From Macrostomum lignano (lineage: Eukaryota): a stretch of 64,000 bases of DNA. Positions 36,664 through 63,106 of the stretch are shown here, in pieces; the first letter of the stretch is position 1; each line of letters starts with the position of its first letter. The stretch lies in the NCBI GenBank assembly GCA_002269645.1, contig NIVC01002241.1:1-64000 (forward strand), written 5' to 3'. The translations under genes and the position numbers were made by a program. The notes beneath the pieces were generated by a model. It saw only the letters and a program-made list of their open reading frames with translations. It was not told the DNA's origin and ran no database searches.

Positions 36664-39600
36664 TCATCTGGGACCATAATAAGGCGGACGACCGAAGCCG
36701 CCGCCACGGCCGAAGCCACCGCCACGGCCGAAGCCGCCGCCGAAACGTGGCTGCCGCTGTTGGTACTGCGGCAGCGGGCTGCCGAACCGGCCGCCGGCTC
36801 CGCCGAAGAAGCCCGGCTGTCGCTGCTGTTGACTCGTCGGCTGAGGCGTCCAGCCGCGGCCTATCACAGCGCCTGGCGGAGGCGGCGGTCCACGAGGCGA
36901 AAACTGCAGCTGCTGCTGCTGCTGCTGCTGAAGCTGACCGCCAGCAGGTCTAAATCGCTTATAAGGCGGCTGATTTAACTGATCGCTACTACTAGCAGTA
37001 GCAGCGGAAGGATCTTCGCTTTCTTTGCCGCCGCTAGCAACGCCGCTAGCAACGCCGCTAGCAACGCCGCATTCGGCCGCATTGAAGCGGCTCAACGAGC
37101 GAAACATATCGCTAAGCCGTTTGTCCCGCTCGTCGGGCGCCGTAGTGGCAATCACCGATTCGGGCTGCAGACAGGCTTTCACTAGCAGGGCCTCCAAGGC
37201 TGGCCGAAGGCTGAGCAGCTTGGCAGCCGTATCGAAGTCAACCTGAAGGCCGATCCAATCGTCTAGGAGGACCCGGCCGCCAGTCCAGACGGCTTTGCGA
37301 GCGCCGAACACAAGGTATTGGAGCGGCGTGACGTTGGACAGCTGCTTGCAGGACACCGCCCTGGTGCGCAGCTTCTCCCCGAACACAAATAGAGGCGACG
37401 GGAAGTGCAGATCGGGGAAATTGCTGGCCACTACGGAGGATTTGTGGACAAGCGCGGCGCGACCTTCAGCTGTTATTACCTGCGCATTGTTTGATAAGGC
37501 CGCATTAAATGAAAATTATTACGATATGAGATGTACAGAGGTGGAAAAGCTAACGATTTATGGGCCGATATGGAAAATAGGAATAATGTGGGGAAGAAAG
37601 GACAGTGAATGGGGAAGATAAGCGATTGGGAAGATAGTGGATGGGGAAGATAAGCGATTCGGAAGATAGTGGATGGGGAAGATAAGCGATTCGGAAGATA
37701 GTGGATGGGGAAAATAGTGGATGGGGAAAATAGTGGATGGGAAGATAGTGAATAAGGAAGATAAGACATTGGGAAGATAGTGAATGGGGAAGATAGTGGA
37801 TGGGGAAGATAAGCGATTCGGAAGATAGTGGATGGGGAAGATAGTGAATAGGGAAGATAAGACATTGGGAAGATAGTGAATGGGGAAGATAGTGGATGGG
37901 AAGATAGTGGATGGGAAAGATAGTGAATGTGGAAGATAGTGAATAGGGAAGATAAGACATTGGGAAGATAGTGAATGGGGAAGATAGTGAATAGGGAAGA
38001 TAGTGAATAGGGAAGATAGTGAATAGGGAAGATAAGACATTGGGAAGATAGTGAATAGGGAAGATAAGACATTGGGAAGATAGTGAATAGGGAAGATAAG
38101 ACATTGGGAAGATAGTGAATAGGGAAGATAGTGAATAGGGAAGATAGTGAATAGGGAAGATAGTGAATAGGGAAGATAGGACATTCGGAAGATAGTGGAT
38201 GGGGAAGATAGTGAATGGGGAAGATAGTGAATAGGGAAGATAGTGAATAGGGAAGATAGTGAATAGGGAAGATAGTGAATGGGGAAGATAGTGAATAGGG
38301 AAGATAAGACATTGGGAAGATAGTGAATGGGGAAGATAGTGAATAGGGAAGATAAGACATTGGGAAGATAGTGAATGGGGAAGATAGTGGATGGGAAGAT
38401 AGTGGATGGGAAAGATAGTGAATGTGGAAGATAGTGGATGGGGAAGATAGTGGATGGGGAAGATAGTGAATAGGGAAGATAAGACATTGGGAAGATAGTG
38501 AATGGGGAAGATAGTGAATAGGGAAGATAGTGAATAGGGAAGATAGTGAATAGGGAAGATAGTGAATAGGGAAGATAGTGAATAGGGAAGATAGTGAATA
38601 GGGAAGATAGTGAATAGGGAAGATAGTGAATAGGGAAGATAAGACATTGGGAAGATAGTGAATGGGGAAGATAGTGAATAGGGAAGATAGTGAATGGGGA
38701 AGATAGTGGATGGGAAGATAGTGAATTGGGAAGATAGTGAATAGGGAAGATAAGACATTGGGAAGATAGTGAATGGGGAAGATAGTGGATGGGAAGATAG
38801 TGGATGGGAAAGATAGTGAATGGGGAAGATAGTGGATGGGGAAGATAGTGGATGGGGAAGATAGTGGATGGGGAAGATAGTGAATGGGGAAGATAGTGAA
38901 TTGGGAAGATAAGACATTGGGAAGATAGTGAATGGGGAAGATAGTGGATGGGAAGATAGTGGATGGGAAAGATAGTGAATGGGGAAGATAGTGGATGGGA
39001 AGATAGTGAATGGGGAAGATAGTGGATGGGAAGATAGTGGATGGGAAAGATAGTGAATGGGGAAGATAGTGGATGGGAAGATAGTGGATGGGGAAGATAG
39101 TGGATGGGGAAGATAGTGAATGGGGAAGATAGTGAATAGGGAAGATAAGACATTGGGAAGATAGTGAATGGGGAAGATAGTGGATGGGAAGATAGTGGAT
39201 GGGGAAGATAGTGGATGGGGAAGATAGTGAATGGGGAAGATAGGGGATGGGTAAGACAAGCGCTGGAGAATTCAGAGAAAAAATAAATCAATAAATATCT
39301 GGAATAGGTGACATGAAACCGGTAAAGATTCGATACAGTTTGAAGATACGCACTGGGATCGAAGGACAGTTTTTGAAGGGAAAATAAATTCATTATATGC
39401 GCGTACCTTCCGCTTTTCCTTGTGATAGCAGACATTGGGACTCAGGCCCAGAGTGATCAGGCTGACCAAAGCGCCCCAGTCGTCGAATCCTTCCCCGCCA
39501 ACTGTATCAGCGGCTGCCGGACCTTCGGGCCCGTCAATCTCGTGATCGCCAACAAAACCGGACGAGTGCAGAATGCCCAACAATTGATTGCGCGCTTCCA

Positions 39601-42600
39601 GAGTGGCGCGCAACGTTGGCGCGCTAAGTCCGCGCTCCTCGCACATCCATTCGGCTCGACCGGGGCCGCCAGCGGAGGCCGATTCGAACATTCGCAGGGC
39701 GACTAGGCAGGCCACGTGATCAGAATTGGTGCCCCGGGCCAGGCCGCGCTGCTGACCGGTTAGCCAGCGCTGGCCAGGCGCCAGAACCAGCGCGTCGCCG
39801 GCGCTAGCGGCTGCGCAGACAGCGGCGCACGGTCGGGCTAAGCCAAGCGCGCAGCCCTGTAGCAGCATGCGTCCTGTTGGGTGCAAGAGAGTGGAGTGAT
39901 ATGCCTGCCAGAGTGCTGTACTTAAGTAGCCTTATAGAATATTCAGTATCATGTATGGTTCAAAGTTAAGAGCATGAATCAAAACTGTCTACGCGCACGG
40001 CGTTTACGTTGATTGTTTGCTGCTTGTTTTGATTTGTTTATCGTCAATATTAGTTTGTTATATCAATTGATCCTTTATTTACAGTGCGCTGTTATTTTGG
40101 CCATTACAAACTTGCCCTTGCGCTTATTTACTTGTGTACTTTCCCTTGCACTTTCGATTCAATGCGCCTTCAAGTTTTAACAATTAAGGTCGAAATCATT
40201 CTGCTGGCAGTTGCTACCGCCACTCCGTCTGAGGCAAAGCTAATGCAGACGCTTGCGAATGAAGTGTTGCAAATTGAATTCCATTGAAATTACGAAACTG
40301 TTAGACAAATTATCGGCTGTCGAGAAGATAGCTGAGACCTGCTTGTGTCCGAAAAAATTATAGATAGACCCACCAAGTGGCCTTTTTGTTAAAATAATGT
40401 CATCTTCAAATATATTACTCGTATTTCAAAATTTAACGGATTTTAATGTCCGCATGAGGAGTGCTGTTGGTATTGTGGCTGCTGCAGCTGCATGTTGTCT
40501 TGTGAGTATTGACGCAGTTTTGTAATTTTGTTTTGTAGTTTTGTGAGTATCGAAGGCATCAAGGCGTCCAATTCAGCAGGAAGCGACGTTCCGTGACGAA
40601 GATAGACCCTGGTATAGTGAATTGCAAACAATTTTCCAAGACTCGTCGAAAGGTAAGTCGAGGTCGCACCTACTTACCGGCAAGCCAGACGAAAGTCAGA
40701 CTAACCTGATCGGCTACGGCCGCTACGCGGATGACCTTACCGTTGCCAATCTGGATCTAATCTGCAGCTCTATTGAACAGCAGCTCAACGACTACCTAGC
40801 CGAACTCGCACCTTTCCTGGAGTCGCGCAAACTACAGATCTGGACTTCAAACTGCACGGCTACTTTCTTCAGCCCGGACCAGCGCGAGTACTCGCGTCGA
40901 CTGCACGTCTGCATCAACGGCACCCAGCTCCCGCAGGCCTTTTATCCGAAAATTCTGCACTGTAAATAAATAACGGCCATCGGGGGTCCGAATTGGAATT
41001 TCGGACCTTATAAAAAAATTCGGACCTCACAGAATGAGTCTTCAACAAAAATCAATGGAACTCATACTCGTATGATAGGGTGATGATAAATAAAATACAT
41101 AAACTCAAGCTAATTTAGTTCTTTTTCACCGGAGGATTTGCTAATACATTACATTAAACGTTGCAAGTTGTTTATTTTCTTAAAAGCTGTATTTGACCAA
41201 TCTAAAAGATGAAACTTGAATGTGATGAACCTTCGTATTTTAATACCATGAGCAGACGTGTCTAGCATCTATTGTAGGGCTTATTAAATAAGGCTTCAAG
41301 AAGAAAGTATAAAATATTTTTTAACTAGGCTCAGAGCCTAGAACTCTAGAAGGGCCAACCAACGGCCAAGGGTATTATGGATTATGGATGATTTTAAGTG
41401 CTAATTTTGCTCTTTTCAATCAACTAACATAAAGAAATTAGTGACACACACAATAGATCATACCATTCTTTAGGATATAACTTCATATTTATAGAATGCA
41501 TCGTTAGATTGAGTCTATGCCTAGTTCATCAAGTTCAATGTCAGTGGCAAGAAATTTAGATTCATTCACGCAGTGATGCCATATCTTTGCTCACTGCATT
41601 TCGCTAATCATGCTTTATTTGTTGCTGAATGATGATGCTGGTGCCCATAGTTCGCTGACACTAAGTAATATTTCTACAATCATTCATTTGCTTCTTAACA
41701 ATACATCACATCCATAAAGAACTGGGGATTCAATTCAAAGCGAAATAGCTCTTTGGATGGTGTTGTATTTATGTCCCCTCTACACAATCCCAAAATAGTT
41801 GTTTGAATTATGATTGATATTTAGAATTATTTAGAAGTAAATGAATGAACTGGTATCTTTTGTCAATCGTTGTTTTTGCTGTCAGTCTGGTTTTTTATGC
41901 ATTATTAATTGCATATTTTTGTATATAGTGTTCCTTACATGCTTTATTATAGCTAATGATATAATGTTACATGTTATCGGTGCATTTTTTACCTCATAAT
42001 TGGTTTTTGACAGTCACTAATACTTAGCTACTCTGAATGCCCGCATAATGCATTGTTTTTTTCTTGCTTTCAATTTCAATTGATTTCAATGCCTGTATAA
42101 TGTATTGCCTTGTACTTGCTTTCAATTACTTCTAAGCATCTTTTGTTGCTTGGCGAAATATAATTGTTCTTTTAAAAAGCACATCCAACACATTTACTAA
42201 ATTAAGAAAACCTTTGTCAGGAAAGCGTTCGCAAATGAAAACGGAAAAGAATGTATCTTTACAAAAATGGGTATTTTTACTCTTTGAACAAAATAAAACT
42301 TCCCTGGTAGCTATAACAATAATTAAATAAACTCCTCCTACAGTTCAATTATGAAAAAATGCAGTACGAAATCAACCAAGAGTTCCGTTTCAAGGATGCC
42401 ACGGACATTTAATTTGGACCTTCTGAGGACCTTCCTTTCGGACGTTTAAGGTCCGCATTGACGATAAGATCCGCATATATAGACGCCGCGGACCTTACAT
42501 AATGGACCTCCTGCGGATCTTCTTTCGGACCTTTACGAATCACAGTGTGGGCGTCAACTTCGACCACAAGCTGTCCTGAGACACGTCTCCACCCTTGCGT

Positions 42601-45600
42601 TGGAGTCGTCAGTTCACGACAAAGAGACAAGAGATTTCTTTGCAGTGGCTCCCTGACGACCAGAGTTATTGACAACGCGTCAGGCCAACCAATAAACCCC
42701 ATTTGACTCGGTCTGTGCCCCGAATAAATATTTAAAAATTTCAGTCATGCAAGACACTGCCAAAATCATGACAACTTCAAACAAATAGTTGGACTCTACC
42801 AACTGGAAGCTTGCCATTGCCACGGCAACTCTACGCCGACATCTACGACATCTCGTACATTCAAAAACAAACGACGCAAGTGCCACGAAGTCAGTGCAGT
42901 GCAAGAGCCGAAAATTACAGTGGCGGTCTGGACTGTAAGTGCCACGAAGTCAGTGCAGTGCAAGAGCCGAAATTACAGTGGCAGTCTGGTCTGTAAGTGC
43001 CACGAAGTCAGTGCAGTGCAAGAGCCGAAATTACAGTGGCAGTCTGGTCTGTAAGTGCCACGAAGTCAATGCAGTGCAAGAGCCGAAAATTACAGTGGCA
43101 GTCTGGTCTGTAAGTGCCACGAAGTCAGTGCAGTCCAAGAGCCGAAAATTACAGTGGCAGTCTGAACTGTAAGTGCCACGAAGTCAGTGCAGTGCAAGAG
43201 CCGAAATTACAATGGCAGTCTGGTAAGTGCCACGAAGTCAATGCAGTGCATTGAGTGCAAGAGCCGAAAATTACAGTGGCAGTCTGGTCTGTAAGTGCCA
43301 CGAAGTCAGTGCAGTCCAAGAGCCGAAAATTACAGTGGCGGTCTGTAAGTGCCACGAAGTCAATGCAGTGCAAGAGCCGAAAATTACAGTGGCAGTCTGG
43401 TCTGTAAGTGCCACGAAGTCAATGCAGTGCAAGAGCCGAAAATTACAGTGGCAGTCTGGTCTGTAAGTGCCACGAAGTCAGTGCGGTGCAAGAGCCGAAA
43501 ATTACAGTGGCGGTCTGTAAGTGCCACGAAGTCAATGCAGTGCAAGAGCCGAAAATTACAGTGGCAGTCTGAACTGTAAGTGCCACGAAGTCAGTGCGGT
43601 GCAAGAGCCGAAAATTACAGTGGCGGTCTGGACTGTAAGTGCCACGAAGTCAATGCAGTGCAAGAGTCGAAAATTACAGTGGCGGTCTGTGGCACTTAGT
43701 CTCAAACTTAACTTTTTACTTCAAATACGGTCGTAGTAACTTGTTTAACACTTTACTATAATATTTATGCACGTATAAATTGTGCCTAAAATAATGCAAC
43801 TTCATCCCATGATTAAATTGAACTTCCACATGATGCTTCATACGGCAACGCAGACGGCAATAACTTGATTCTCGACTATTGAAGTTGCAAAATGTTCTCA
43901 ATATCAGATGATTCATCAAAGAAAAGAAAAGAACAAGCACGATTTCAGCACGGTCTTCAACGGCATGGGTTGTTGGCTTTGCAAGAGATTGCTACCATTC
44001 GTGCTGTATTGAAATCCGAAAATTTTTTGAACATAGTTATTCGACAAGCTTGCCTTAGATCTTTAAAGTCAACTACAAGTACTATGCTTCAATGAGGCAA
44101 GTGCTGTTAGAGTGACAGATTTATGCAATACTAGACGTCATATATGCAGCTCTTACACTATCGATTGACTGTCTCTATTTGCCACCTTATTTGCCACTTG
44201 TAAAGAGCTGCTTGTGTGCACCAATGATGCGCATTCCTCCAGATCTTTGATCGAGATAAAAGAAGTTGCAAGCGACATTCTACGAGCAGTCGTATGGCAT
44301 CACCAATTAGCAAAGTCACGACCTTGAAAACCACAAAAATCACCAAGTTTTTAACTGGCTTGCCAAATTTTGTGAAGGAGATTACAAAATTTTCTTGTCC
44401 GTATGAATATTCACTTCGTTTCTTGTATGTTATTCACCAACAGCAATTTAATTTGTCCTGAGATACAAAAGTATTGCTTTAATTATTATTTAATATTTTA
44501 TGCCTATACCAATTTCAATGCCGAATTCCACGCCGTCTCCTGCATTGTAAGTGCAGGAGACAATATTTAGTCAGATTCTTCAACTTACTGGACTACCTCA
44601 GCTGAAAAGAAACCCAAAAATGGCTTCGTATCAAAGTTCTATAATTTAAGATATCATTTGGGAGGCTTGTGGCCCTGCAACTGAGGATCTGGGAGGGTGG
44701 CAGCCCAGCAAATGAGGATCTAGGAGGCTGGCCTAGCAACTGAGGATCTGGGATGGAGGCAGTCCAGCCTGAGTAGCTGGGAGGGTGGCTCAGCAACTGA
44801 GGACCTGGGAGGGTGACAGCCCAGCCTGAGTATCTGGGAGGGTGGCAGCCCAGCAAATGAGGATCTGTGAGGCTGGCCCTGCAACTGAGGATTTGGGAGG
44901 GTGACAGCCCAGCAACTGAGGATCTGGGAGGGTGACAGCTCAGCAACTGAGGATCTGGGAGGGTGACAGCCCAGCAAATGAGGATCTGGGAGGGTGGCTC
45001 AGCAACTGAGGATCTGGGAGGGTGGCAGCCCAGCAAATGAGGATCTGTGAGGCTGGCCCAGCAACTGAGGATCTGGGAGGGTGGCAGCCCAGCAACCGAG
45101 GATCTGTGAGGCTGGCCCTGCAACTGAGGATCTGGGAGAGTGGCAGCCCAGCCTGAGTATTTGGGGGGGGGGAGGCTAGCAGCCCAAATTGAGCATGAAG
45201 GTCAAGAGATCCAGCAGCATACCCAGTCGCGGCTCAAGCGGCAGCCTAGCAAGCAGGCGCCCCAGCGGGGTCAGCTCATCATTAGCGTCCAGCGCACGCA
45301 TCTCCCGCAGAGTGTGCTCAGCCTCCATAACGGCATCCAGTGGCGGCGGTTGCGGCGTCTTAGCCAGGAACTCCGGTATGGGTCCCAGCCGGAGCAGTTT
45401 GCCCATCAGCGACAGTTCGTGCAAGGGCGAGCGCAACAGTTCGGGAGTGACGTGAGCTTCCATTCGTTCCTGGCGAGCCCTGGAGCACAGGTGAAAGCAG
45501 AAGCCAGGCCTGGTGCGACCGGCCCGACCGCGCCGCTGCTCCAGGTTGGACTTGGCGGCCCAGACGGTGCAATAGTGAGTCAGGTTGTTCCTAGAGGTGA

Positions 45601-46018
45601 ACAGCTTCACCTTGGCTTTACACGAGTCGATTACAAATACAACATCGTTGATAGTGATGGAAGATTCGGCAATGTTGGTGCTTAGTATCACCTTGGTAAC
45701 GCCGTCTGGCACCGGTTCAAATACTCGACGCTGATCTTCGCGAGGAATCTGCGAGTGCAATGGCAGAATAGTGTAGGAGGCGTTCCCGAATTCCGGATGG
45801 TTCTGCAGGTGGCGCGCTAATGAGAATATGAGGCTCCAGCCAGGCAAGAAGATGAGCACTGCACCCGATACGGGCAGCGTCTGGATGTACCTGGATGAAA
45901 AAAGGTTTTAGGGGTTAGTTTTCGCATTTCTATAAGTGTTTTCGATATTCAGGTGAGTAGTATTTGTAACACTCGTAGTAATTAGCAGCAGTACAGTAAT
46001 AAAAGTAGTAGTAGTAGT

Positions 46019-46105
<87 letters not shown>

Positions 46106-46107
46106 AA

Positions 46108-46156
<49 letters not shown>

Positions 46157-47375
46157 CAATTAGCTCACCTGAGCAGAGCTTCAATCAATTCGAAGCTGGT
46201 CTCCCGTTCGGAAATTTTAGCCATGGCAGCTTTGGTCTCGGCCGAATATTCATCCGAGCAGATGAGGTTGCAGTTTTCATCTGCGGGATCGTCTGGCGCG
46301 CCGCCGACGCCGCCGCCTTGTCTTGTCTCTTGTCTTGTGATCCTTTTGTCGCCGGTAGGCGTGGATTACCCGAATGGTTACTCTCGTTCCCATCGGGTTT
46401 TTGACCTTGATATTGTTTAGGGAGGTGCTCTGGGTGGTCGGTCCAGAGCCACTCTGATAGGGGAAGGTTTGCCCCCGAAACATAGTTTTTACACTATGAT
46501 CGAGGGCCTCTCCCCCCCCCCCGGTTCTCTCTTTGCCGGCCGGAAGGCCGCCCGCTTGGCACCTCTTGACGGTGGAGAACCGTTGCACCAGCCGACGCCG
46601 CCGCCACCTCCGCCGTCTTCATCGTCGTCGTCGTCATCCTGGCCGGCGCGACCTCTGCCGCTTTTGCCTCGTTTTATCGGCGGCGGCGGCACAAATTTCA
46701 GCATTTCGATGCAGTCCTCTAGAAAATAACTTTGCACCGGATGAACCCGACCGTCGATTTGCATGCAGACGCAGGGGTTGAAGAATTCGGTAAACAGAGA
46801 GGTGTCAACCGTAGCGGACATTAGAATCAACCGAAGCTGCGGATTAGCCCTAATCACATCGCGCATAATAGCCATGACAAAGTCCGTGTTAGCGTCGCGC
46901 TCGTGAATCTCGTCGATGATCACGTGACTAACGCCGCGAAGGCCGCCTTCGAGCCGGCGCAGAAGGGTGCCGACTGTGACGTATTGTAGGGCCCCGTACG
47001 GCCGGGGCGTCACGGTCTCGAAGCGGACCGAGTAGCCGACGGAGATCCCGAGAGGCTCGGCGCGTTCAGCCGCGACTCGGTCCGCGATGCTGATGGCGGA
47101 GATGCGGCGCGGCTGGGTGACGATGATGTTGCAGTGGGCACCGCGGCCGCTAGACAGATAGTCGTCCAGGATGAACTGCGGCAGCTGGGTGGTCTTGCCC
47201 GAGCCGGTCTCGCCTCGGATCAGTGTGACGGAGTTTTCGTGTACAGCGGCCAGGAGCTGCTCCCGGTGCGCCGCGGCTGGCAGCTGGTTGCGTTCGGCTA
47301 GGAGGCGCTGGTACTCGGGATTGGCCGACTGCGGGATGGCATAGGCGTGTGGTTGACGGACAGACAGACAAACAA

Positions 47376-47430
<55 letters not shown>

Positions 47431-47453
47431 CAGACAGACAGACAGACAGACAC

Positions 47454-47508
<55 letters not shown>

Positions 47509-47509
47509 C

Positions 47510-47554
<45 letters not shown>

Positions 47555-50500
47555 ATACCAACCTCTGCAGCGAACTGCTCAGCCAGTCGTTGGCTGATCT
47601 CCTCCAACGAGGCGAACGCGTCCGGTCCTTCATCGATGTTGCAGGACTGCCAGGCGTTCCAGTTGGGCACAGGCGGAGACCAGGGCAGGGTGCAGGGCCG
47701 CTGCCTGCGATAGTTAATAGGTTTAAATGTGTGTAAAAAGTAAAAAAGAATCAAAACTCAAAAAGATGCAATCTTACTTAGGCGAGGGTTCAAAGTCGGT
47801 CACGTGATAATTGATAAGCAGGCTGACTCCCGCGTCTCCATTGGCGGCATCGGATCCGCCCGGATACTGCGCATCAGCAGCATCCCCAGCGTCATCTTGA
47901 TCTAGATTCGGCGGCCGGACCACCGGTCTCAGCTGCAGGTCCTGCAGCAGGCCGTCTAGCTGGGCTTCAATCTCTGACGCCAGGCGCAGCGTCAATTCCG
48001 GCACATCTTCGCCGCGCTTCTTTTTCGACCGACCAGTGTAGGCCTCGATGTCGCCTAGGTGGAACAGCTGGCGAACCAAGGATAAAGCGCAGGCTTTACT
48101 AGCGGTCTGCTTGTTTGAGCCGTGCTCAACTGCCGTGATGCTTCGGTTTGTTCGACGGCACTGGATAGTCATCTTGGCTGAGAAGCTTCTGCCAACGGGT
48201 TGTGATCAGGATTGTTAAAGCTGATGGCTTAATGGGAATGGGAATTGCTCAGATGGTCAGTGACTCAATGGGAATTGCTCAGATGGTCAGTGACTCAATG
48301 GGAATTGCTCAGATGGTCAGTGACTCAATGGGAATTGCTCAGGTGGTCAGTGACTCAATGGGAATTGCTCAGATGGTCAGTGACTCAATGGGAATTGCTC
48401 AGGTGGTCAGTGACTCAAAGAGAATTGCTCAGGTGGTCAGTGACTCAAAGGGAATTGCTCAGATGGTCAGTGACTCAATGGGAATTGCTCAGGTGGTCAG
48501 TGACTCAAAGAGAATTGCTCAGGTGGTCAGTGACTCAAAGGGAATTGCTCAGATGGTCAGTGACTCAATGGGAATTGCTCAGATGGTCAGTGACTCAATG
48601 GGAATTGCTCAGATGGTCAGTGACTCAATGGGAATTGCTCAGATGGTCAGTGACTCAATGGGAATTGCTCAGATGGTCAGTGACTCAATGGGAATTGCTC
48701 AGATGGTCAGTGACTCAATGGGAATTGCTCAGATGGTCAGTGACTCAATGGGAATTGCTCAGATGGTCAGTGACTCAATGGGAATCGCTCAGATGGTCAG
48801 TGACTCAATGGGAATCGCTCAGATGGTCAGTGACTCAATGGGAATTGCTCAGATGGTCAGTGACTCAAAGGGAATTGCTCAGATGGTCAGTGACTCAATG
48901 GGAATTGCTCAGATGGTCAGTGACTCAATGGGAATTGCTCAGATGGTCAGTGACTCAATGGGAATTGCTCAGATGGTCAGTGACTCAATGGGAATTGCTC
49001 AGATGGTCAGTGACTCAATGGGAATTGCTTAGATGGTAAATAACTCAATGGGAATTTCTCAGATGGTAAATAACTCAATGGGAATTGCTCAGGTGGTCAA
49101 TGACTCAAAGGGAATTGCTCAGATAGTAAATGACTCAAAGGAAATTAATGGCGAATCTGCTGATTTAACTAAGACTGAAACAAACAACCTCAATAATACG
49201 AATGCACTCAGACTCACCAGTTGGGCCATTCGAACAAAAAACCATGCACAATGTACTGTAACAGAGAGAAGACGGCGGCCTAAAATGTGAGGAATAGTTT
49301 TTATTCTGGTTGACCTAATAGATTGTTTTGTACTGCCGCTGTTTATATTACTTGTAAGTAGCATAATCAACATTTCCTCACAATTTAGGCCGCCATTAAA
49401 TTATAGCAAATTTCACCTAGCTCCGCTTGGCAACAAAATGTATATTGAGCACCAATTTGATGCCAAGTGATTTGATTTATAGATTAGGGAAAAGTTTCGC
49501 CGCAACAGGTGAGTCTGGTGCCTTCTTATCAATGCTATTAAATCAATCCAAATATAAAAGTACAAGCAGTTACTACCTTCGATGATCCGGGCCAATAGAA
49601 CTATAGTGATAATCGATTTTGCCTTGTTTAGTCGTCTGCAGGTACTGGTGCAGCCGGCTCTTGGCATTGTCTATGGTCCAGCCTCCGTGGATGTCGGCTG
49701 TGAAGTCAACTTCCTCGGCCTGCGATAAGAATCATATCAACAGGTATAATAGAGCTTTTGTCTATGGTAGCAAGGCCGGCACAGCGGCTTGGGCCCATAG
49801 ATTTTATATTCTCTAGATAGGAGCCGCTTTGTATTGCGGTAATAGGGAAAGTGCGACCCTTTTTTTGGTCACTTGTGTGAAAAAGCTGACATGAGTTCAG
49901 TAGCTTAGGGACATGGACGCTATTTTTTGAGAATTTGATAGAACTTCTCGTTTAGTAAGAGTAGATATGTATCTCAGTGGAATGGAACTTTCGTATCTCA
50001 GACATGCCCACAAATGAGTTAAATAAAAAGCTACTCAATCAAACTAACAATGATGCATGCACTGCAGAGACTACTGACGAAATTGAGTTCAGTAGTTGAT
50101 TTTCGCGCTGTTGCGACTAGCAGAGAAAGCGTATTCTGAGGAGCTGCTGCCACCCTTGCTACCATAGACAAAAGCTCAAATCTTTCCTTTGGCAAACACA
50201 TCTTGGATTAAATCCAATGCATCACCGAACCCACCTCTTCCAGTCGCTTCTGATCGGCAATTCTATCGATATAGCCATGCCTAGGTCCCCCCAGAGCGCC
50301 AGTTTGCGGGCCGCCACCTCCTATGCCAGCCTGGTCGGCAGCAGCGGCCTGGAACCCGACCGGACCGCCGCCAGCCATCACCGGTTTCTGATACGGGCCA
50401 GCGCCGCCAATAGCCGAGCATTCTAACGAGTCCTGAGTAAACTGCGGCACTTCAGAGGCCGTCATTTGGCCCTGCCTGACCAAATAGGCTACGAAATCTC

Positions 50501-53500
50501 TGGCTGCATTAGTCTGCGCGTCCTTCTTGCTTGTGGAGCTGCCGCGGGCTACATAGTCGAAACTGTCCACTCGAAGCTGCGGGTCGGTGGTGAGGAATAG
50601 GTAGGTAATAAGGTCTGTCTGTCTGTCTGTCTGTCTGACTGTCTGTCTCTGGTCTTAGTGTCTGTCTGACCATGTCTTAGTGTCTGTCTGGCTGTGTCTT
50701 AGTGTCTGTCTGTCTCCGTGTCTTAGTGTCTGTCTGACCATGTCTTAGTGTCTGTCTGACCATGTCTTAGTGTCTGTCTGTCTCCGTGTCTTAGTGTCTG
50801 CCTGACTGTGTCTTAGTGTCTATCTGACTGTGTCTTAGTGTCTGTCTGTCTCCGTGTCTTAGTGTCTGTCTGACCATGTCTTAGTGTCTGTCTGACCATG
50901 TCTTAGTGTCTGTCTGTCTCCGTGTCTTAGTGTCTGCCTGACTGTGTCTTAGTGTCTGTCTGTCTCCGTGTCTTAGTGTCTGCCTGACTGTGTCTTAGTG
51001 TCTGTCTGACTGTGTCTTAGTGTCTGTCTGTCTCCGTGTCTTAGTGTCTGCCTGACTGTGTCTTAGTGTCTGTCTGTCTGTGTCTTAGTGTCTGTCTGAC
51101 TGTGTCTTAGTGTCTGTCTGACTGTGTCTTAGTGTCTGTCTGTCTCCGTGTCTTAGTGTCTGCCTGACTGTGTCTTAGTGTCTGTCTGTCTGTGTCTTAG
51201 TGTCTGTCTGTCTGTGTCTTAGTGTCTGTCTGACCGTGTCTTAGTGTCTGTCTGTCTCCGTGTCTTAGTGTCTGTCTGACTGTGTCTTAGTGTCTGTCTG
51301 ACTGTGTCTTAGTGTCTGTCTGTCTCCGTGTCTTAGTGTCTGCCTGACTGTGTCTTAGTGTCTGTCTGTCTGTGTCTTAGTGTCTGTCTGACTGTGTCTT
51401 AGTGTCTGTCTGACCATGTCTTAGTGTCTGTCTGTCTCCGTGTCTTAGTGTCTGTCTGACTGTGTCTTAGTGTCTGTCTGACCATGTCTTAGTGTCTGTC
51501 TGACCATGTCTTAGTGTCTGTCTGACCGTGTCTTAGTGTCTGCCTGACTGTGTCTTAGTGTCTGTCTGACTGTGTCTTAGTGTCTGTCTGACCATGTCTT
51601 CGTGTGTGTCTGTCTCCGTGTCTTAGTGTCTGCCTGACTGTGTCTTAGTGTCTGTCTGTCTGTGTCTTAGTGTCTGTCTGACTGTGTCTTAGTGTCTGTC
51701 TGTCTCCGTGTCTTAGTGTCTGCCTGACTGTGTCTTAGTGTCTGTCTGTCTGTGTCTTAGTGTCTGTCTGACTGTGTCTTAGTGTCTGTCTGACTGTGTC
51801 TTAGTGTCTGTCTGACCATGTCTTAGTGTCTGTCTGTCTCCGTGTCTTAGTGTCTGCCTGACTGTGTCTTAGTGTCTGTCTGACTGTGTCTTAGTGTCTG
51901 TCTGTCTCCGTGTCTTAGTGTCTGCCTGACTGTGTCTTAGTGTCTGTCTGTCTCCGTGTCTTAGTGTCTGCCTGACTGTGTCTTAGTGTCTGTCTGACTG
52001 TGTCTTAGTGTCTGTCTGTCTCCGTGTCTTAGTGTCTGCCTGACTGTGTCTTAGTGTCTGTCTGTCTGTGTCTTAGTGTCTGTCTGACTGTGTCTTAGTG
52101 TCTGTCTGACTGTGTCTTAGTGTCTGTCTGTCTCCGTGTCTTAGTGTCTGCCTGACTGTGTCTTAGTGTCTGTCTGTCTGTGTCTTAGTGTCTGTCTGAC
52201 TGTGTCTTAGTGTCTGTCTGACCATGTCTTAGTGTCTGTCTGTCTGTGTCTTAGTGTCTGTCTGACTGTGTCTTAGTGTCTGTCTGTCTCCGTGTCTTAG
52301 TGTCTGCCTGACTGTGTCTTAGTGTCTGTCTGACTGTGTCTTAGTGTCTGTCTGTCTCCGTGTCTTAGTGTCTGCCTGACCGTGTCTTAGTGTCTGCCTG
52401 ACTGTGTCTTAGTGTCTGTCTGTCTGTGTCTTAGTGTCTGTCTGACTGTGTCTTAGTGTCTGTCTGACCATGTCTTAGTGTCTGTCTGTCTCTGTCTTAG
52501 TGTCTGTCTGTCTGTCTGACCGTGTCTTAGTGTGTCTGTCTGTCTGTCTGACCGTGTCTTAGTGTCTGTCTGTCTCCGTGTCTTAGTATCTGCCTGACTG
52601 TGTCTTAGTGTCTGTCTGACTGTGTCTTAGTGTCTGTCTGTCTCCGTGTCTTAGTGTCTGCCTGACTGTGTCTTAGTGTCTGTCTGTCTCCGTGTCTTAG
52701 TGTCTGCCTGACTGTGTCTTAGTGTCTGTCTGTCTGTGTCTTAGTGTCTGTCTGACTGTGTCTTAGTGTCTGTCTGACCATGTCTTAGTGTCTGTCTGTC
52801 TGTGTCTTAGTGTCTGTCTGACTGTGTCTTAGTGTCTGTCTGACCATGTCTTAGTGTCTGTCTGTCTCCGTGTCTTAGTGTCTGCCTGACTGTGTCTTAG
52901 TGTCTGTCTGACTGTGTCTTAGTGTCTGTCTGACTGTGTCTTAGTGTCTGTCTGTCTCCGTGTCTTAGTGTCTGCCTGACTGTGTCTTAGTGTCTGTCTG
53001 ACTGTGTCTTAGTGTCTGTCTGTCTCCGTGTCTTAGTGTCTGCCTGACCGTGTCTTAGTGTCTGCCTGACTGTGTCTTAGTGTCTGTCTGTCTGTGTCTT
53101 AGTGTCTGTCTGACTGTGTCTTAGTGTCTGTCTGACCATGTCTTAGTGTCTGTCTGTCTCTGTCTTAGTGTCTGTCTGTCTCTATGTCTTAGTGTCTGTC
53201 TGTCTCTGTCTTAGTGTCTGTCTGTCTGTCTGACCGTGTCTTAGTGTGTCTGTCTGTCTGTCTGACCGTGTCTTAGTGTCTGTCTGTCTGTCTGTCTGTC
53301 CAGTTATTAATAGTACAGTTATAATGAGTGGGTTCATCTACGAGTGTGACAAGATCAATGGTGACATAAAACACTCAGTTTAAAAAGGATCAGCAACAAA
53401 TCCAAGCTGTCTTACATCGCAAACAAACCGGGACCGTCCCCGGCCGGATTCTTGGCGCACTTCGTACGCGGGTGGCTGGTATTTTCTGGTGCCAAGCCAG

Positions 53501-53529
53501 CCGTATAGGAATGCTTTGATGTCGGACAT
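36664..53529 (-). CDS. DHX9: ATP-dependent RNA helicase A (DHX9/maleless), about 1323 aa
   Basis: Exons 53529-53416, 50576-50235, 49719-49577, 48188-47778, 47704-47563, 47328-46608, 46316-46169, 45890-45223, 39873-39407 and 37479-36664, all phase-consistent. Motifs include two dsRBDs ([30 protein letters not shown]), [27 protein letters not shown]2/OB-fold segments and a Gly/Arg-rich tail. Confidence 0.96.
37590..39250. repeat. Minisatellite, 16-17 bp (GGGAAGATAGTGAATA)
   Basis: Fills the last DHX9 intron. Confidence 0.96.
40690..42870 (+). pseudogene. Decayed non-LTR reverse transcriptase fragment in a DHX9 intron, split by an insertion
   Basis: The left part (about 40690-40957) reads YADDLTV..SRKLQI..INGTQLP..PKIL. 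The right part (from 42548) continues GVNFDHKLS and later [11 protein letters not shown], with stops. Confidence 0.75.
40958..42547. mobile_element. Non-autonomous CACTA/EnSpm-like DNA element
   Basis: CACTGT...ACAGTG termini with a TG dinucleotide duplicated on both flanks and clustered GGTCCG/CGGACC(T) subterminal motifs near both ends. Removing it restores the RT frame. Confidence 0.7.
42880..43690. repeat. Minisatellite, about 59 bp (AAGTGCCACGAAGTCAGTGCAGTGCAAGAGCCGAAAATTACAGTGGCAGTCTGGTCTGT)
   Basis: About 14 tandem units. Confidence 0.95.
44670..45160. repeat. Minisatellite, 31 bp (GAGGATCTGGGAGGGTGGCAGCCCAGCAACT)
   Basis: Same core as 60600-61300. Confidence 0.93.
46005..46157. repeat. 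(TAG)n microsatellite
   Basis: In DHX9 intron 45891-46168. Confidence 0.98.
46303..46605 (-). mobile_element. 273-bp retroposed insertion (46318-46590) with a 15-bp target-site duplication inside the DHX9 coding sequence
   Basis: Identical GCCGACGCCGCCGCC at 46303-46317 and 46591-46605. The minus-strand 3' end is a CAAGA-type repeat tail (..CACAAGACAAGAGACAAGACAA). There are stops in the DHX9 frame. Confidence 0.88.
47357..47553. repeat. (GACA)n microsatellite
   Basis: In DHX9 intron 47329-47562. Confidence 0.98.
48230..49145. repeat. Highly homogeneous minisatellite, 30 bp (GGGAATTGCTCAGATGGTCAGTGACTCAAT)
   Basis: About 30 units in a DHX9 intron. Confidence 0.98.
50610..53300. repeat. Minisatellite, 22-24 bp (GTCTTAGTGTCTGTCTGACTGT), about 2.7 kb
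   Basis: Fills the first DHX9 coding intron. Confidence 0.97.
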
Positions 53530-59286: not shown

Positions 59287-62200
59287 CTACTTAGTAAAGT
59301 AGTGAGGCAGGCTCGGTTTGTGCTTTTTAGACTGATTGGCATCGCCAGCTGACGAAGAGAAATCGCCGGGCACGGCGTGGTGCGGTCGCTTCGAACCGGA
59401 GAGGCTGGGCGGCACGACGGCTGATCCGGAGGCCGACGAGGATGCTGAGCCGGACAGACCCGGACGCGAATGATGATGATGATGCTGATGCTGCTGTTGA
59501 CGATAATGATGATTCGGATGCTGGCCAGAATGATGCGGATGCTGGCCAGAATGATGCGAATGATGCTGATGATTATTGTGATGCTGCTGTTGCTGCTGTG
59601 ATTGCTGCTGCTGTTGCCTGTGTAAAAATTGGATTAAATTGTTTGTCACATATAGTAAATAGGGCTTAAAGGGGGCTTGATGAGATGCTAATGCTCAAGG
59701 AGGGTTGATGAGATGCCAATGCTCAAAGGGGGTTGATGAGATGCCAATGCTCAAAGGGGGTTGATGAGATGCCAATGCTCAAAGGGGGTTGATGAGATGC
59801 CAATGCTCAAGGGGGATTGATGAGATGCCAATACTCAAGGGGGTTGATGAGATGCCAATGCTCAAGGGGGAGGGGTTGATGAGATGCCAATGGTCAGGGG
59901 GGTTGATGAGATGCCAATGCTCAAGGGGGGTTGATGAGATGCCAATGCTCAAAGGGGTTGATGAGATGCCAATGCTCAGGGGGGGGGGTTGATGAGATGC
60001 CAATGCTCAGGGGGGGGGGGGGTTGATGAGATGCCAATGCTCAAGGCAAGAGCCAAACGTATGAGTCAATTTATTGCACTCACCTGTGATGCTGCGACCA
60101 AGGAAGCTGCTGTCGCTGGTGCTGCTGCTGCTGATGGTGATGATAAGCCGGGCCGGAAGGCTTGCCGGCGCCAGCCGACTGCGCCGCTGCTGCCGCGTCG
60201 TTTTGACGCCGCTTCTTGTACTCGTCAATCGTTAGGGCCGCTGCTGGCCGGCTGTGCTGCGTGACAGCTGCTGCTGCTGCTGCTGCTGCTCCTGTCGCAG
60301 CTGATGAAGAGTCGCCAGATGCTGACGGGGCCGAACTGGCATCTGTTGAAGCTGATGCGCTGGCCGCGGCTGCGGCGGCGGCGGCTTTGGCAGCTTTCGC
60401 AGCGGCTTCGCGATCCTGTTGACGCTTAGCAATCTGCTGCTGCTGCAGCTGCATGAGCTGGCTTGGGGTGGGAGCCGCCTGCGGGTTGGTTAAGCCGCGG
60501 TTATCAGATGTTTCTGTTGAAACTCCTCTAAGAGTGCTCTAGCCAGTGCTCCAGTGCTCTAACCCAGTGCTCAAACAAGTTAAACAGAATTCACCTGGAT
60601 CTGGAAGGGTGGCTGCGAACAGCTTGAGGATCTGGGAGGGTGGATACTCAGTCTGAGGATCTGGGAGGGTGGCAATCCAGTCTGAGGATCCGTGAGGGTG
60701 GCAATGGCAACCCAGTCTGAGGATCTGGGAGGGTGGCAACCCAGTCTGAGGATCTGGGAGGGTGGCAATCCAGTCTGAGGATCTGGGAGGCAATCCAGTC
60801 TGAGGATCTGGGAGGGTGGCAATCCAGTCTGAGGATCCGGGAGGGTGGCAATCCAGTCTGAGGATCTGGGAGGGTGGCAATCCAGTCTGAGGATCCGGGA
60901 GGGTGGCAATTCAGTCTGAGGATCTGGGAGGGTGGCAATCCAGTCTGAGGATCTGGGAGGGTGGATACTCAACCTGAGGATCTGGGAGGGCGGATACTCA
61001 ACCTGAGGATCTGGGAGGGTGGCAATCCAGTCTGAGGATCCGGGAGGGTGGCAATTCAGTCTGAGGATCTGGGAGGGTGGCAATCCAGTCTGAGGATCTG
61101 GGAGGGTGGATACTCAGCCTAAGGATCTGGGAGGGCGGATACTCAACCTGAGGATCTGGGAGGGTGGCAATCCAGTCTGAGGATCTGGGAGGGTGGATAC
61201 TCAGCCTGAGGATCTGGGAGGGCGGATACTCAACCTGAGGATCTGGGAGGGTGGCAATCCAGTCTGAGGATCTGGGAGGGTGGCAACCCAGCCTGAGTAT
61301 GATCTGGTAAAATACGGCTCGTAGCTATGCTTCTTAACTTTAGCTGATTAATCACGTGGATCCAGTAAAATTAATTGTAAGTCCCTCTGCGAACTGCAAG
61401 TTCCACTTTGTCTGACTGGAAATGTCAAGCAGCTATTGATGGGACTGATCGATCATGTAAGCAAGCTCTAGTTAAGCATTGAGAATTTGGCGCACTTTTT
61501 ATTTTGCTTGTGAGCTGCCAAATTCCTCAGTTATATTTTGCTTTAGCTTGCTAGTGGACATTACCGTTTAAAACGTTTCGTCGCTTTAAAATAGAATCGA
61601 ATATTCGACTCTACTCGCACATTACCCCTCCTGTTCACCCTACCACCCCTCCTGTTCACCCTACCACCCCTCCTGTTCACCCTACCACCCCTCCTGTTCA
61701 CCCTACCGACCCTCCTGTTCACCCTAGCACCCTCCTGTTCACCCTACCGACCCTCCTGTTCACCCTAGCACCCTCCTGTTCACCCTACCACCCCTCCTGT
61801 TTACCCTACCACCCCTCCTGTTTACCCTACCACCCCTCCTGTTCACCCTACCACCCCTCCTGTTCACCCTACCACCTCCTGTTCACCCTACCACCTCCTG
61901 TTCACCCTACCACCCCTCCTGTTCACCCTACCACCCCTCCTGTTCACCCTACCACCCCTCCTGTTCACCCTACCGACCCTCCTGTTCACCCTACCGACCC
62001 TCCTGTTCACCCTACCACCCTCCTGTTCACTTTATCACCCCTCGTGTTCACCCTACCACCCCTTCTGTTCACTCTATCACCCCTCCTTTTCACCCTACCA
62101 CCCTCCTGTTCACCATACCCCTGCCATCTACCCTACTTCTGTTCACACCACCCTATAATCACATTATACTCTAAACACTACCCCTAAACACGCTACACCA

Positions 62201-63106
62201 TTAACACACACTACCAATTATTACAGTACAAACTTACTGCTTACACCATTTTTGCACCCAACAGCCGCAAAGCAAATAGCTCACCTTAGTAAGAAGCTTA
62301 ACCGTCTTCTTCTCCTCCGGCGGCACTTTAGTGAGCTCGGCGATGCACTCGTCTACGGCAGCTTTGAGCAGTTCGGGCGTCATGCTGGGATCGAAGTAAT
62401 TAAACCAATACTTGCCGTCAGTCTCAGTGACGGATGGCAGATCAGTGTTGCTCCAAGAGGCGGCCATCTGAACGCAGGCGGCTGCCAGAGTCTCCGGTCG
62501 GAGTCTGAGCACCATCATGGTGAGGTGCAGCAGATTGGTACAGTTATAATAGGCCGTCTGGATCAAGGGTCTGGGCAGATTCAAAGCGCGACAGCCCCGA
62601 CTAAGCATATTGTGCGGATGCGTGATGGTCAGGTTGAAGCCGAGACAGGGCAGGATAAGGCTCTCCAGCAGCACGATCTCTTCGCCGACTTGCGACATCT
62701 CCTCGTCGCTCACCTGCAAATTAATGGAAAAAATAACCGTTTCTAAAGTTATTTTTCGATACATATCGGCTTATTAATTTTGGTGGCCGCGCACTTAGCA
62801 AACTGATAATAAAAGTAGAAACCAGAAACAAAGACAAAGACCTCAGTAACTCATTTCAGTTACTGAACTCGCGCGAGTTCGAATCTCATTTTATATATTT
62901 TCCTCACCTGTTTGATATCGGCCACCTGTCGCTCGTGTCGAAAGTACTGCTGCACAACGTAGGCCAGCCGACGCGGGCAATCCTCCATTTTAGCAGCCAA
63001 AAAGAAACAGGCGGCGGCCACTTTGCCCAGTGGCAGCTTGTGCGATGGCCAATAGATTAACAGGCGGTGCATCATAATGATCGCGGCGTTCATCACCACC
63101 TGGGCG
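59287..63106 (-). CDS. CycT: Cyclin T (P-TEFb subunit); first coding exon lies beyond the window
   Basis: Exons 63106-62908, 62713-62285, 60478-60084 and 59617-59287 are in frame. Motifs include AIIMMHR, FLAAKMED, LESLILPCLGFNLTITHPH, DGKYWFNY, LTIDEYKKRR and a His/Gln-rich C-terminus. Confidence 0.88.
59675..60045. repeat. Minisatellite, about 28 bp (TTGATGAGATGCCAATGCTCAAAGGGGG)
   Basis: Fills the last cyclin T intron. Confidence 0.95.
60600..61300. repeat. Minisatellite, 29 bp (GAGGATCTGGGAGGGTGGCAATCCAGTCT)
   Basis: In a cyclin T intron. Confidence 0.95.
61620..62150. repeat. Minisatellite, 21 bp (ACCACCCCTCCTGTTCACCCT)
   Basis: In a cyclin T intron. Confidence 0.95.

What the first reader, a model, noticed from the sequence alone, without database searches (positions are those of the whole stretch)
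46303..46607. Retro-insertion in a DHX9 coding exon that can be spliced out in frame: a possible intron caught at birth
Seen: 273 bp flanked by a perfect 15-bp duplication interrupt the Asp/Gly-rich segment after the DEIH domain and carry several in-frame stops. On the gene strand a GT lies just before the first TSD (GGA G|GT, 46607-46606). The element's tail plus the first base of the second TSD creates an AG (CAAG|GC, 46318-46317). Removing 46317-46607 (291 nt) gives [13 protein letters not shown] instead of the original [14 protein letters not shown], losing only one Gly. Known: long TSDs with a simple-repeat tail mark target-primed retrotransposition, and TE-mediated intron gain (introners) is mostly described for DNA transposons. 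Inference: either a SINE/LINE-type intron-generating element or a null allele/paralogue. Caveat: the acceptor has no pyrimidine tract.
Basis: partly seen in the sequence, partly recalled or inferred. Interest (0 to 1): 0.82.

Follow-up and report, generated by a model that had tools for sequence, protein, structure and literature searches.

The report
Young retroposon insertion in flatworm DHX9
One of three near-identical copies of the DHX9 RNA-helicase gene in the polyploid flatworm Macrostomum lignano carries a recent 273-bp SINE-like insertion in a coding exon; it most likely just breaks that redundant copy, and nothing shows it is a new intron.

Summary
A 273-bp insert (46318-46590) sits between two perfect 15-bp repeats. 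It interrupts exon 6 of a minus-strand DHX9/MLE gene and adds four in-frame stops.

The window is Macrostomum lignano. My 9-exon model matches UniProt A0A1I8HX42 at 1182 of 1182 aligned residues. This species is a neopolyploid with three subgenomes that are about 98% identical. A second DHX9 copy (UPI0007A25941, 99.3% identical) has exactly the predicted empty site. So the insertion and its target-site duplication are confirmed as specific to one gene copy.

The element looks like a sense-oriented non-LTR retroposon. It has an (ACAAG)n-like tail, no terminal repeats, twice as many A as T, no T4 run and a strong RNA fold.

The intron-at-birth idea is untested, and the sequence does not favour it. 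The proposed acceptor is AAG with 17% pyrimidine, whereas all eight real acceptors are CAG with 56-72%. The proposed donor lacks G at +5. A better in-frame acceptor exists at 46281. Public gene models splice the insert out, but the same annotation also draws 12- and 21-nt "introns", so its junctions are not RNA evidence.

Most likely this is a disrupted, redundant gene copy.

The parts
36664..53529 (-). DHX9/MLE-like RNA helicase A gene with 9 exons. Without the insertion it encodes an intact 1324-aa protein.
   Evidence: Gene model built; all 8 introns are GT-AG. Pfam finds dsrm x2, DEAD, Helicase_C, HA2_N/HA2_C and OB_NTP_bind. 1182/1182 aligned residues match M. lignano A0A1I8HX42.
46169..47328 (-). 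Exon 6. It is 1160 nt with the insertion and 872 nt without. It encodes the DEIH RecA1 domain and the acidic/Gly linker.
46591..46605 (-). Target-site duplication, upstream copy (GGCGGCGGCGTCGGC).
46318..46590 (-). 273-bp inserted element, SINE-like, sense to the gene.
   Evidence: Contains 4 in-frame stops. A=82 versus T=39, with no T4 run on this strand and three on the opposite strand. RNA fold z = -4.6 on this strand versus -2.4 on the other. No terminal inverted repeats. No tRNA or Rfam match.
46318..46339 (-). 3' simple-repeat tail, CACAAGACAAGAGACAAGACAA ((ACAAG)n-like).
46303..46317 (-). Target-site duplication, downstream copy.
46606..46607 (-). It lies in pre-existing exon sequence.
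   Evidence: Score -0.4 against 0.2 to 7.2 for the 8 real donors; C at +5.
46317..46318 (-).
   Evidence: Score -12.5 against -2.0 to 8.3 for real acceptors. Pyrimidine 0.17 against 0.56-0.72. This is the only GT-AG solution for the P0121 peptide.
46651..46652 (-). GT of the donor GAG|GTCGCG used by the public model A0A1I8HX42, giving a 336-nt 'intron'.
   Evidence: Donor score -4.3.
46281..46282 (-). AG of the better cryptic acceptor GATCCCGCAG|ATG, 22 nt downstream of the second repeat copy. Paired with the 46607 donor it removes 327 nt in frame, giving EDGG|DENCN.
   Evidence: Best-scoring in-frame, stop-free GT-AG pair. Pyrimidine 0.56. It has the same CCCGCAG heptamer as the real acceptors of introns 1 and 5. 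Its product equals the peptide of model P0124.

Best explanation
[quoted passage not shown] Its neopolyploid genome holds three DHX9/MLE gene copies (homeologs) that are about 98-99% identical. In the copy seen here, a 273-bp non-autonomous non-LTR retroposon inserted in the sense orientation into the (GGC)n-rich linker-coding part of exon 6. The element is either SINE-like or the 3' end of a 5'-truncated LINE. The likely mechanism is target-primed reverse transcription: a staggered cut 15 bp wide produced the perfect duplication, and the (ACAAG)n-like 3' tail abuts the downstream copy.

The insertion is recent. The duplication is perfect, the tail is intact, and nothing else in 3975 nt of coding sequence is broken.

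As it stands, the insertion puts four stop codons into the reading frame. The default outcome is a truncated product (dsRBDs plus RecA1 only) or a message degraded by nonsense-mediated decay. That makes this a null or strongly hypomorphic copy, tolerated because the other copies are intact, one of them with the empty site. Any rescue by cryptic splicing would be a side effect of weak pre-existing sites, not a property of the element.

Shown here: the insertion, the duplication, the empty-site copy, the otherwise intact gene, the species, and the poor splice signals.
Inferred: the retrotransposition mechanism, Pol III/SINE status, and loss of function.
For: - Perfect 15-bp duplication flanking 273 bp, with 4 in-frame stops.
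- Complete 9-exon GT-AG gene encoding an intact 1324-aa protein with full DHX9 architecture once the insert is removed.
- 1182/1182 residue identity to M. lignano A0A1I8HX42.
- A second copy, UPI0007A25941, is 99.3% identical and carries the exact empty-site peptide. A third copy is A0A1I8F4N9.
- M. lignano has three subgenomes (S, L1, L2) with about 2% SNP divergence and abundant indels (PMC10733133).
- Element features: simple-repeat tail, no terminal repeats, A-rich and T-poor sense strand, no T4 run in sense but three in antisense, fold z = -4.6 versus -2.4.
- SINEs make up 0.39% of the assembly, about one per 64 kb. A single copy in this window is therefore expected.
- The proposed splice sites are much weaker than the gene's eight real pairs.
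Against: - No second copy of the element was found anywhere: not in the window, two metagenome scans, one viral scan, or two protein-space searches. The M. lignano genome itself is not in any searchable collection, so membership of a repeat family is unproven.
- There is no recognisable tRNA, 7SL or 5S head, and no correctly ordered A and B boxes.
- This copy shows no excess of amino-acid changes: about 3 lineage-specific differences against 5 and 4 in the other two copies. That fits a very recent insertion or continued function equally well.
- Three in-frame GT-AG solutions exist. All of them leave a linker at least as long as in 88 other animals (61-76 aa against 55-64), so functional rescue by splicing cannot be excluded without RNA data.
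Confidence: 0.7

Rival explanations
1. Nascent intron. The insertion pushed weak pre-existing or tail-derived GT and AG sites far enough apart to work as an intron. This copy's pre-mRNA is then spliced in frame by one of three routes: 46607..46317 (291 nt), 46652..46317 (336 nt) or 46607..46281 (327 nt). The result is a working helicase with a slightly shorter linker.
For: - Three stop-free, in-frame GT-AG pairs exist.
- The acceptor at 46281 (CCCGCAG|A, 56% pyrimidine) falls at the low end of the real acceptor range.
- The linker in this species is 13-23 aa longer than the 55-64 aa seen in 88 orthologues, so each product would still have a linker of normal or greater length.
- The rest of the gene is intact and shows no extra amino-acid changes.
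- Public models already draw such introns.
- Own knowledge: transposon insertions in exons are sometimes removed by cryptic splicing, for example Tc1 in C. elegans and Ds/dSpm in maize.
Against: - No RNA evidence of any kind is available.
- Both candidate donors have C at +5, where 7 of 8 real donors have G.
- The 46317 acceptor is AAG with 17% pyrimidine and no T, while all 8 real acceptors are CAG.
- The public models come from an annotation that also draws 12-nt and 21-nt GT..AG 'introns', so they reflect frame-saving in silico.
- With two intact copies present, there is no selective need for rescue.
Confidence: 0.15
2. The insert is not a transposable element. It is filler DNA captured during repair of a staggered double-strand break, which also leaves short flanking direct repeats. 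This is the route proposed for new Daphnia introns.
For: - Only one copy was seen in every search.
- No recognisable SINE head or known RNA family.
Against: - A 15-bp duplication, a simple-repeat 3' tail, strong strand asymmetry (A 82, T 39), no T4 run on the sense strand and a strongly structured sense RNA (z = -4.6) are all typical of retroposons.
- The species' genome could not be searched, so the absence of other copies carries little weight.
- SINE density predicts about one copy per window.
Confidence: 0.07
3. Assembly artefact. The 288 bp were introduced by a chimeric or mis-corrected long read in a repeat-rich polyploid assembly.
For: The M. lignano assemblies are known to be difficult. 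36% of the Mlig_3_7 assembly length is in scaffolds chimeric between subgenomes (PMC10733133).
Against: - An artefact would not create a precise 15-bp duplication with an in-frame, cleanly bounded insert.
- The public model A0A1I8HX42, identical in coding sequence, also has to skip this site. However, it may derive from the same reads.
Confidence: 0.04

Closest known systems
SINE or 5'-truncated LINE insertions made by target-primed reverse transcription, such as exonic Alu/L1 insertion alleles and SINE-like Sm-alpha elements of schistosomes (own knowledge)
   Same: A 15-bp duplication of variable-length type, a simple-repeat 3' tail, no terminal repeats, a short (273 bp) non-coding structured RNA, an A-rich sense strand free of Pol III terminators, and disruption of a coding exon.
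   Different: No recognisable tRNA, 7SL or 5S head and no correctly ordered A and B boxes. The LINE partner was not identified. Multi-copy status was not demonstrated.
Introners, the intron-generating transposons (PMC9860276; PMC12130899, which attributes about 5% of confidently classified families to non-LTR retrotransposons)
   Same: A transposon inside a coding exon, flanked by a duplication, with an AG that can be read from the element end plus the duplication. This resembles Micromonas introners, which co-opt a splice site from the duplication (PMC11282704).
   Different: Introners are defined as families of many near-identical, demonstrably spliced introns that carry or create good splice sites. 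Here there is one copy, no RNA evidence, no donor in the element and a very poor acceptor. Macrostomum and flatworms are not mentioned in the main text of the 2025 survey.
Transposon insertion alleles partly rescued by cryptic splicing: Tc1 in C. elegans, Ds/dSpm in maize (own knowledge)
   Same: An exonic transposon that could be removed imprecisely using fortuitous GT and AG sites in or near the element, leaving small in-frame changes.
   Different: In those cases the splicing was shown experimentally. Here it is only a possibility.
Gene-copy divergence after whole-genome duplication in M. lignano (PMC10733133; PMC5730564)
   Same: Three paralogous copies with about 98% small-scale identity that differ mainly by indels. 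The insertion is one such indel, falling in the coding sequence of one copy.
   Different: The papers describe genome-wide patterns. This particular DHX9 insertion is not described in them.

Membership tests
Non-LTR retroposon (SINE-type) insertion by target-primed reverse transcription | Flanking target-site duplication of variable length (about 5-20 bp) | tested here: met
   Perfect 15-bp duplication. The empty site is confirmed in a second gene copy.
Non-LTR retroposon (SINE-type) insertion by target-primed reverse transcription | A-rich or simple-repeat 3' tail abutting the downstream duplication copy, with no terminal inverted or long terminal repeats | tested here: met
   22-nt (ACAAG)n-like tail at 46339-46318. 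No inverted repeat between the element ends.
Non-LTR retroposon (SINE-type) insertion by target-primed reverse transcription | Pol III-type head (tRNA, 7SL or 5S derived, with A and B boxes in order) | tested here: inconclusive
   ARAGORN finds nothing. No Rfam match. An A-box-like site with 1 mismatch lies at element position 132, and a B-box-like site with 2 mismatches lies at position 10, which is the wrong order. There is no T4 terminator on the sense strand and three on the antisense strand. The element may be 5'-truncated.
Non-LTR retroposon (SINE-type) insertion by target-primed reverse transcription | Many dispersed copies in the host genome | not testable with these tools
   There is no other copy in the 64-kb window, but about one SINE per 64 kb is expected. 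The M. lignano genome is not in the searchable collections. Scans of other collections were negative.
Introner (intron-generating transposon) | Removed from the mRNA by the spliceosome | not testable with these tools
   No transcript data are reachable. The public gene models are not RNA evidence.
Introner (intron-generating transposon) | A family of near-identical introns in many unrelated genes | not testable with these tools
   Only one copy was seen. The host genome could not be searched.
Introner (intron-generating transposon) | The element ends and/or the duplication supply competent splice sites | tested here: not met
   The only GT near the element's 5' end is CTG|GTGCAA (score -2.3). 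The tail AG is AAG with 17% pyrimidine (score -12.5). Real sites score 0.2-7.2 for donors and -2.0 to 8.3 for acceptors.
Ordinary U2-type intron of this gene | GT-AG ends with donor G at +5 and a CAG acceptor preceded by a pyrimidine-rich stretch, as in the gene's 8 introns | tested here: not met
   The 46607 and 46652 donors both have C at +5 (7 of 8 real donors have G). The 46317 acceptor is AAG at 17% pyrimidine, against 8 of 8 CAG at 56-72%. Only the alternative acceptor at 46281 (CAG, 56%) reaches the bottom of the real range.
DHX9 / MLE (RNA helicase A) | Two N-terminal dsRBDs, a DEIH helicase core, HA2, an OB fold and a Gly/Arg-rich tail | tested here: met
   Pfam finds dsrm x2, DEAD, Helicase_C, HA2_N, HA2_C and OB_NTP_bind. 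The protein has a DEIH motif and a C-terminal [12 protein letters not shown]. Best hits are RNA helicase A / MLE across animals.

The most novel reading that the evidence does not exclude
The insertion-bearing DHX9 copy is still functional because the spliceosome removes the retroposon in frame, most plausibly from the 46607 donor to the 46281 acceptor. That would be a retroposon-triggered intron birth caught within one genome, with the intact empty-site copy alongside it as a built-in 'before' state.
Probability: 0.12. Interest if true: 0.65.

Novelty: new member of a known kind. Interest (0 to 1): 0.25.

Why it matters
As it stands, this is an ordinary event: a young retroposon insertion knocking out one of three redundant gene copies in a recently polyploid animal. 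It is useful mainly in two ways. It gives a dated example of early gene-copy decay in M. lignano, and it is a warning that public gene models (A0A1I8HX42) hide such insertions behind invented introns.

It would matter more if copy-specific RNA data showed in-frame splicing. The three copies would then offer a natural before-and-after comparison for how a transposon insertion turns exon sequence into an intron in an animal. Public M. lignano RNA-seq makes that directly testable.

Tried and rejected
1. Other copies of the element. None was found in any search:
- blastn with word size 7 against the window and a tail-motif search;
- two exact-pattern scans of the metagenome collection and one viral scan;
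- a protein search with the one frame that is open through the element (nothing);
- an exhaustive HMMER search. Its single hit is a 3038-aa repeat protein at 27% identity, which I judged spurious.

2. Known RNA families. There is no tRNA. No Rfam family reaches its gathering score anywhere in the window. The low-level matches over 46200-46700 are chance (nhaA-I, microRNAs).

3. Hammerhead ribozyme. The plus strand at 46454-46481 resembles a hammerhead core lacking G8. No Rfam hammerhead model matched at E<=10, and the motif is antisense to the orientation that every other feature favours. I kept it only as a lead.

4. DNA transposon, MITE or LTR element. Rejected: there are no terminal inverted repeats, and 15 bp is too long a duplication for those classes.

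5. Ciliate-type internal eliminated sequence or programmed DNA elimination, prompted by the direct repeats flanking an insert in coding sequence. Rejected: the gene is a standard-code animal gene with animal-type introns, and no such system is known in Macrostomum.

6. A pre-existing 39-nt alternatively spliced segment in the empty allele, suggested by model P0124, which lacks exactly the 13 residues between the 46607 donor and the 46281 acceptor. Not accepted: the same model also has 12-nt and 21-nt GT..AG gaps, so these are annotation devices.

7. The first protein search seemed to show that no close relative existed. That was misleading: every listed hit was 490 aa or shorter for a 281-aa query. 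Repeating the search with the full 1324-aa protein found M. lignano at once.

8. DNA of the other two copies. The look-up of encoding contigs has no record for P0122 or P0124.

9. The annotation methods of Wasik et al. 2015 could not be read because the paper is not held.

Full report
**Observation.** The gene lies on the minus strand. The 15-mer GGCGGCGGCGTCGGC occurs at 46605-46591 and again at 46317-46303, and the two copies flank exactly 273 nt, 46590-46318. Insert plus one repeat is 288 nt, so the frame is preserved. Four in-frame stops fall inside the insert, with first bases at 46491, 46419, 46380 and 46368. Removing 46607..46317 gives [13 protein letters not shown], and removing the insert plus one repeat gives [14 protein letters not shown]. 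The description is correct in every detail.

**Gene and organism.** I built a 9-exon model on the minus strand:

| Exon | Coordinates |
|---|---|
| 1 | 53529-53416 |
| 2 | 50576-50235 |
| 3 | 49719-49577 |
| 4 | 48188-47778 |
| 5 | 47704-47563 |
| 6 | 47328-46169 |
| 7 | 45890-45223 |
| 8 | 39873-39407 |
| 9 | 37479-36664 |

All eight introns are GT-AG, and all eight acceptors end in CAG. Without the 288 bp, the coding sequence is 3975 nt and encodes an uninterrupted 1324-aa protein. It has two dsRBDs, DEAD (DEIH), Helicase_C, HA2, an OB fold and a Gly/Arg-rich tail. The insertion is the only defect.

A first protein search with the 281-aa exon found nothing above 66% identity. All of its listed hits were 490 aa or shorter. 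Repeating the search with the full-length protein gave Macrostomum lignano RNA helicase A0A1I8HX42 (P0121) as the top hit. It is identical to my model at 1182 of 1182 aligned residues. The window is therefore M. lignano.

**Empty site in a second gene copy.** Two further M. lignano sequences were returned.
- P0122 (UniParc UPI0007A25941) is 99.3% identical (1046/1053). At the site it reads ...[37 protein letters not shown]..., which is exactly the empty-site peptide predicted from one repeat copy.
- P0124 (A0A1I8F4N9) is a third copy with its own substitutions.

This matches what is published for the species. It is a neopolyploid with three subgenomes (S, L1, L2) that differ by about 2% in SNPs but by many indels (PMC10733133), and its assembly holds large duplicated blocks (PMC5730564). 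The insertion is thus specific to one of three gene copies.

**The element.** Several features fit a non-LTR retroposon inserted sense to the gene.
- On the gene strand the insert ends in CACAAGACAAGAGACAAGACAA, an (ACAAG)n-like tail, directly before the downstream repeat copy.
- There are no terminal inverted repeats.
- The gene strand has 82 A against 39 T. It has no run of four or more T, while the opposite strand has three such runs.
- As RNA, the gene strand folds at -109.7 kcal/mol, z = -4.6 against shuffles. The other strand gives z = -2.4.

Together with the 15-bp duplication, these point to either a SINE or the 3' end of a 5'-truncated LINE.

Some expected features are missing. ARAGORN and Rfam find no tRNA, 7SL or 5S relationship. 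The box-like motifs are weak and in the wrong order. A LINE with endonuclease, RT and RNase H lies at 425-3657, but it shares no sequence with the insert and its 3' end is cut off by the window edge.

I could not show that the element is repeated. The window, two metagenome scans, one viral scan and two protein-space searches were all negative or spurious. The M. lignano genome itself is not searchable here. SINEs make up 0.39% of that genome, which is about one copy per 64 kb, so a single copy in the window is expected.

**Could it be spliced?** I scored sites with an approximate generic animal matrix and compared them with the gene's own sites.

| Site | Sequence | Score | Pyrimidine (-20 to -3) |
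|---|---|---|---|
| Real donors (8) | 7 of 8 have G at +5 | 0.2 to 7.2 | - |
| Real acceptors (8) | all CAG | -2.0 to 8.3 | 56-72% |
| Alternative acceptor, 46281 | GATCCCGCAG\|ATG | -1.9 | 56% |

Among all 146 GT-AG pairs in exon 6 that remove every stop and keep the frame, the best uses the same donor with the acceptor at 46281, 22 nt downstream of the second repeat copy. That acceptor carries the CCCGCAG heptamer of the real acceptors of introns 1 and 5. The pair removes 327 nt and gives EDGG|DENCN.

The element brings no usable donor. Its nearest GT, CTG|GTGCAA, scores -2.3.

The linker hit by the insertion is unusually long in this species. It spans 77 aa between the YFLED and FELIEALL motifs, against 55-64 aa in 88 other animals. 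Each of the three in-frame products (76, 64 and 61 aa) would probably still be a working protein. Splicing rescue is therefore possible in principle, but the signals argue against efficient use.

**Public gene models are not RNA evidence.** This is the only GT-AG solution that yields its peptide [14 protein letters not shown]. P0124 lacks exactly the 13 residues between the 46607 donor and the 46281 acceptor. However, P0124 also contains 12-nt and 21-nt gaps that are bounded by GT..AG in the window sequence, and real introns cannot be that short. Both models also include two dubious extra exons inside intron 7, one of them with an AAG acceptor. These junctions look like frame-saving choices made by a gene predictor. 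I could not read the annotation methods.

**Interpretation.** The most likely reading (about 0.7) is a recent retroposon insertion that disables one of three redundant DHX9 copies. It is an ordinary early step in the divergence of duplicated genes after genome doubling. The insertion must be young: the duplication is perfect, the tail is intact, there is no other lesion, and this copy has about 3 private amino-acid differences against 5 and 4 in the other two.

The rivals are:
- real in-frame splicing, making it a nascent intron (about 0.15);
- captured filler DNA rather than a transposon (about 0.07);
- an assembly artefact (about 0.04).

**Comparison with what is known.**
- In mechanism it resembles SINE or L1 exonic insertion alleles.
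- If spliced, it would resemble transposon alleles rescued by cryptic splicing (Tc1, Ds; own knowledge) more than introners. Introners are defined by large families of well-spliced copies (PMC9860276).
- Introners derived from non-LTR retrotransposons are already reported, at about 5% of confidently classified families (PMC12130899). Singular introns of retrotransposon origin are also known (PMC11282704). Even the optimistic reading would therefore be a new example and not a new principle.
- Its one special asset is that the empty-site copy sits in the same genome.

**Verdict.** I class it as a new member of a known kind, with low to moderate interest (0.25). The decisive test is copy-specific junction counting in existing M. 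lignano RNA-seq.

Noticed in passing
window 425-3657 (minus strand): LINE-type retrotransposon ORFs with an AP-endonuclease, a reverse transcriptase and an RNase H domain, split over two frames. Its 3' UTR is cut off by the window start. It shares no sequence with the 273-bp insert.
   Followed up: partly
window 47329-47562 and 45891-46168 (DHX9 introns 5 and 6): Two short introns consist almost entirely of microsatellite on the gene strand: about 200 bp of (CTGT)n and about 150 bp of (TAC)n. The first stays open in all three frames.
   Followed up: no
window 37604-39256, 42878-43689, 44672-45152, 48237-49146, and 50616 to about 53300: Long minisatellite arrays with units of 16/48, 59, 31, 30 and 22 nt fill the larger DHX9 introns. 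This fits the 13% tandem-repeat content reported for M. lignano.
   Followed up: partly
window 42499-42573 and about 40813-40938 (minus strand, inside intron 7): Two GT-AG-flanked open segments are included as exons in the public models A0A1I8HX42 and UPI0007A25941. Together they would insert 68 aa at the start of the HA2 domain. The second has an AAG acceptor with a purine-rich upstream stretch. They may be real alternative exons or prediction artefacts.
   Followed up: partly
window 46454-46481 (plus strand, inside the insert): CTGATAGGGGAAGGTTTGCCCCCGAAAC resembles a hammerhead ribozyme core (CUGAUGA, helix II, GAAAC) missing one G. It is followed by a 5-bp hairpin and GATC. No Rfam hammerhead model matched at E<=10. 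The motif is antisense to the orientation the other features favour. Hammerhead-bearing SINE-like elements are known in schistosomes (own knowledge).
   Followed up: partly
protein A0A1I8F4N9 (P0124), compared with window exons 4, 6 and 7: This public gene model has 12-nt and 21-nt gaps that are bounded by GT..AG in the window sequence, plus out-of-frame stretches. This shows that the annotation bridges assembly errors with artificial micro-introns.
   Followed up: yes
window 62237-62770 (minus strand): An open reading frame that looks like a cyclin box, of cyclin T/K type by eye, suggests a neighbouring gene upstream of DHX9. A further Ala/Gln-rich ORF lies at 60083-60538.
   Followed up: no
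tool behaviour: the search for homologous proteins listed only hits up to about 1.75 times the query length: 490 aa or shorter for a 281-aa query. This hid the species' own full-length proteins until the full-length query was used.
   Followed up: yes
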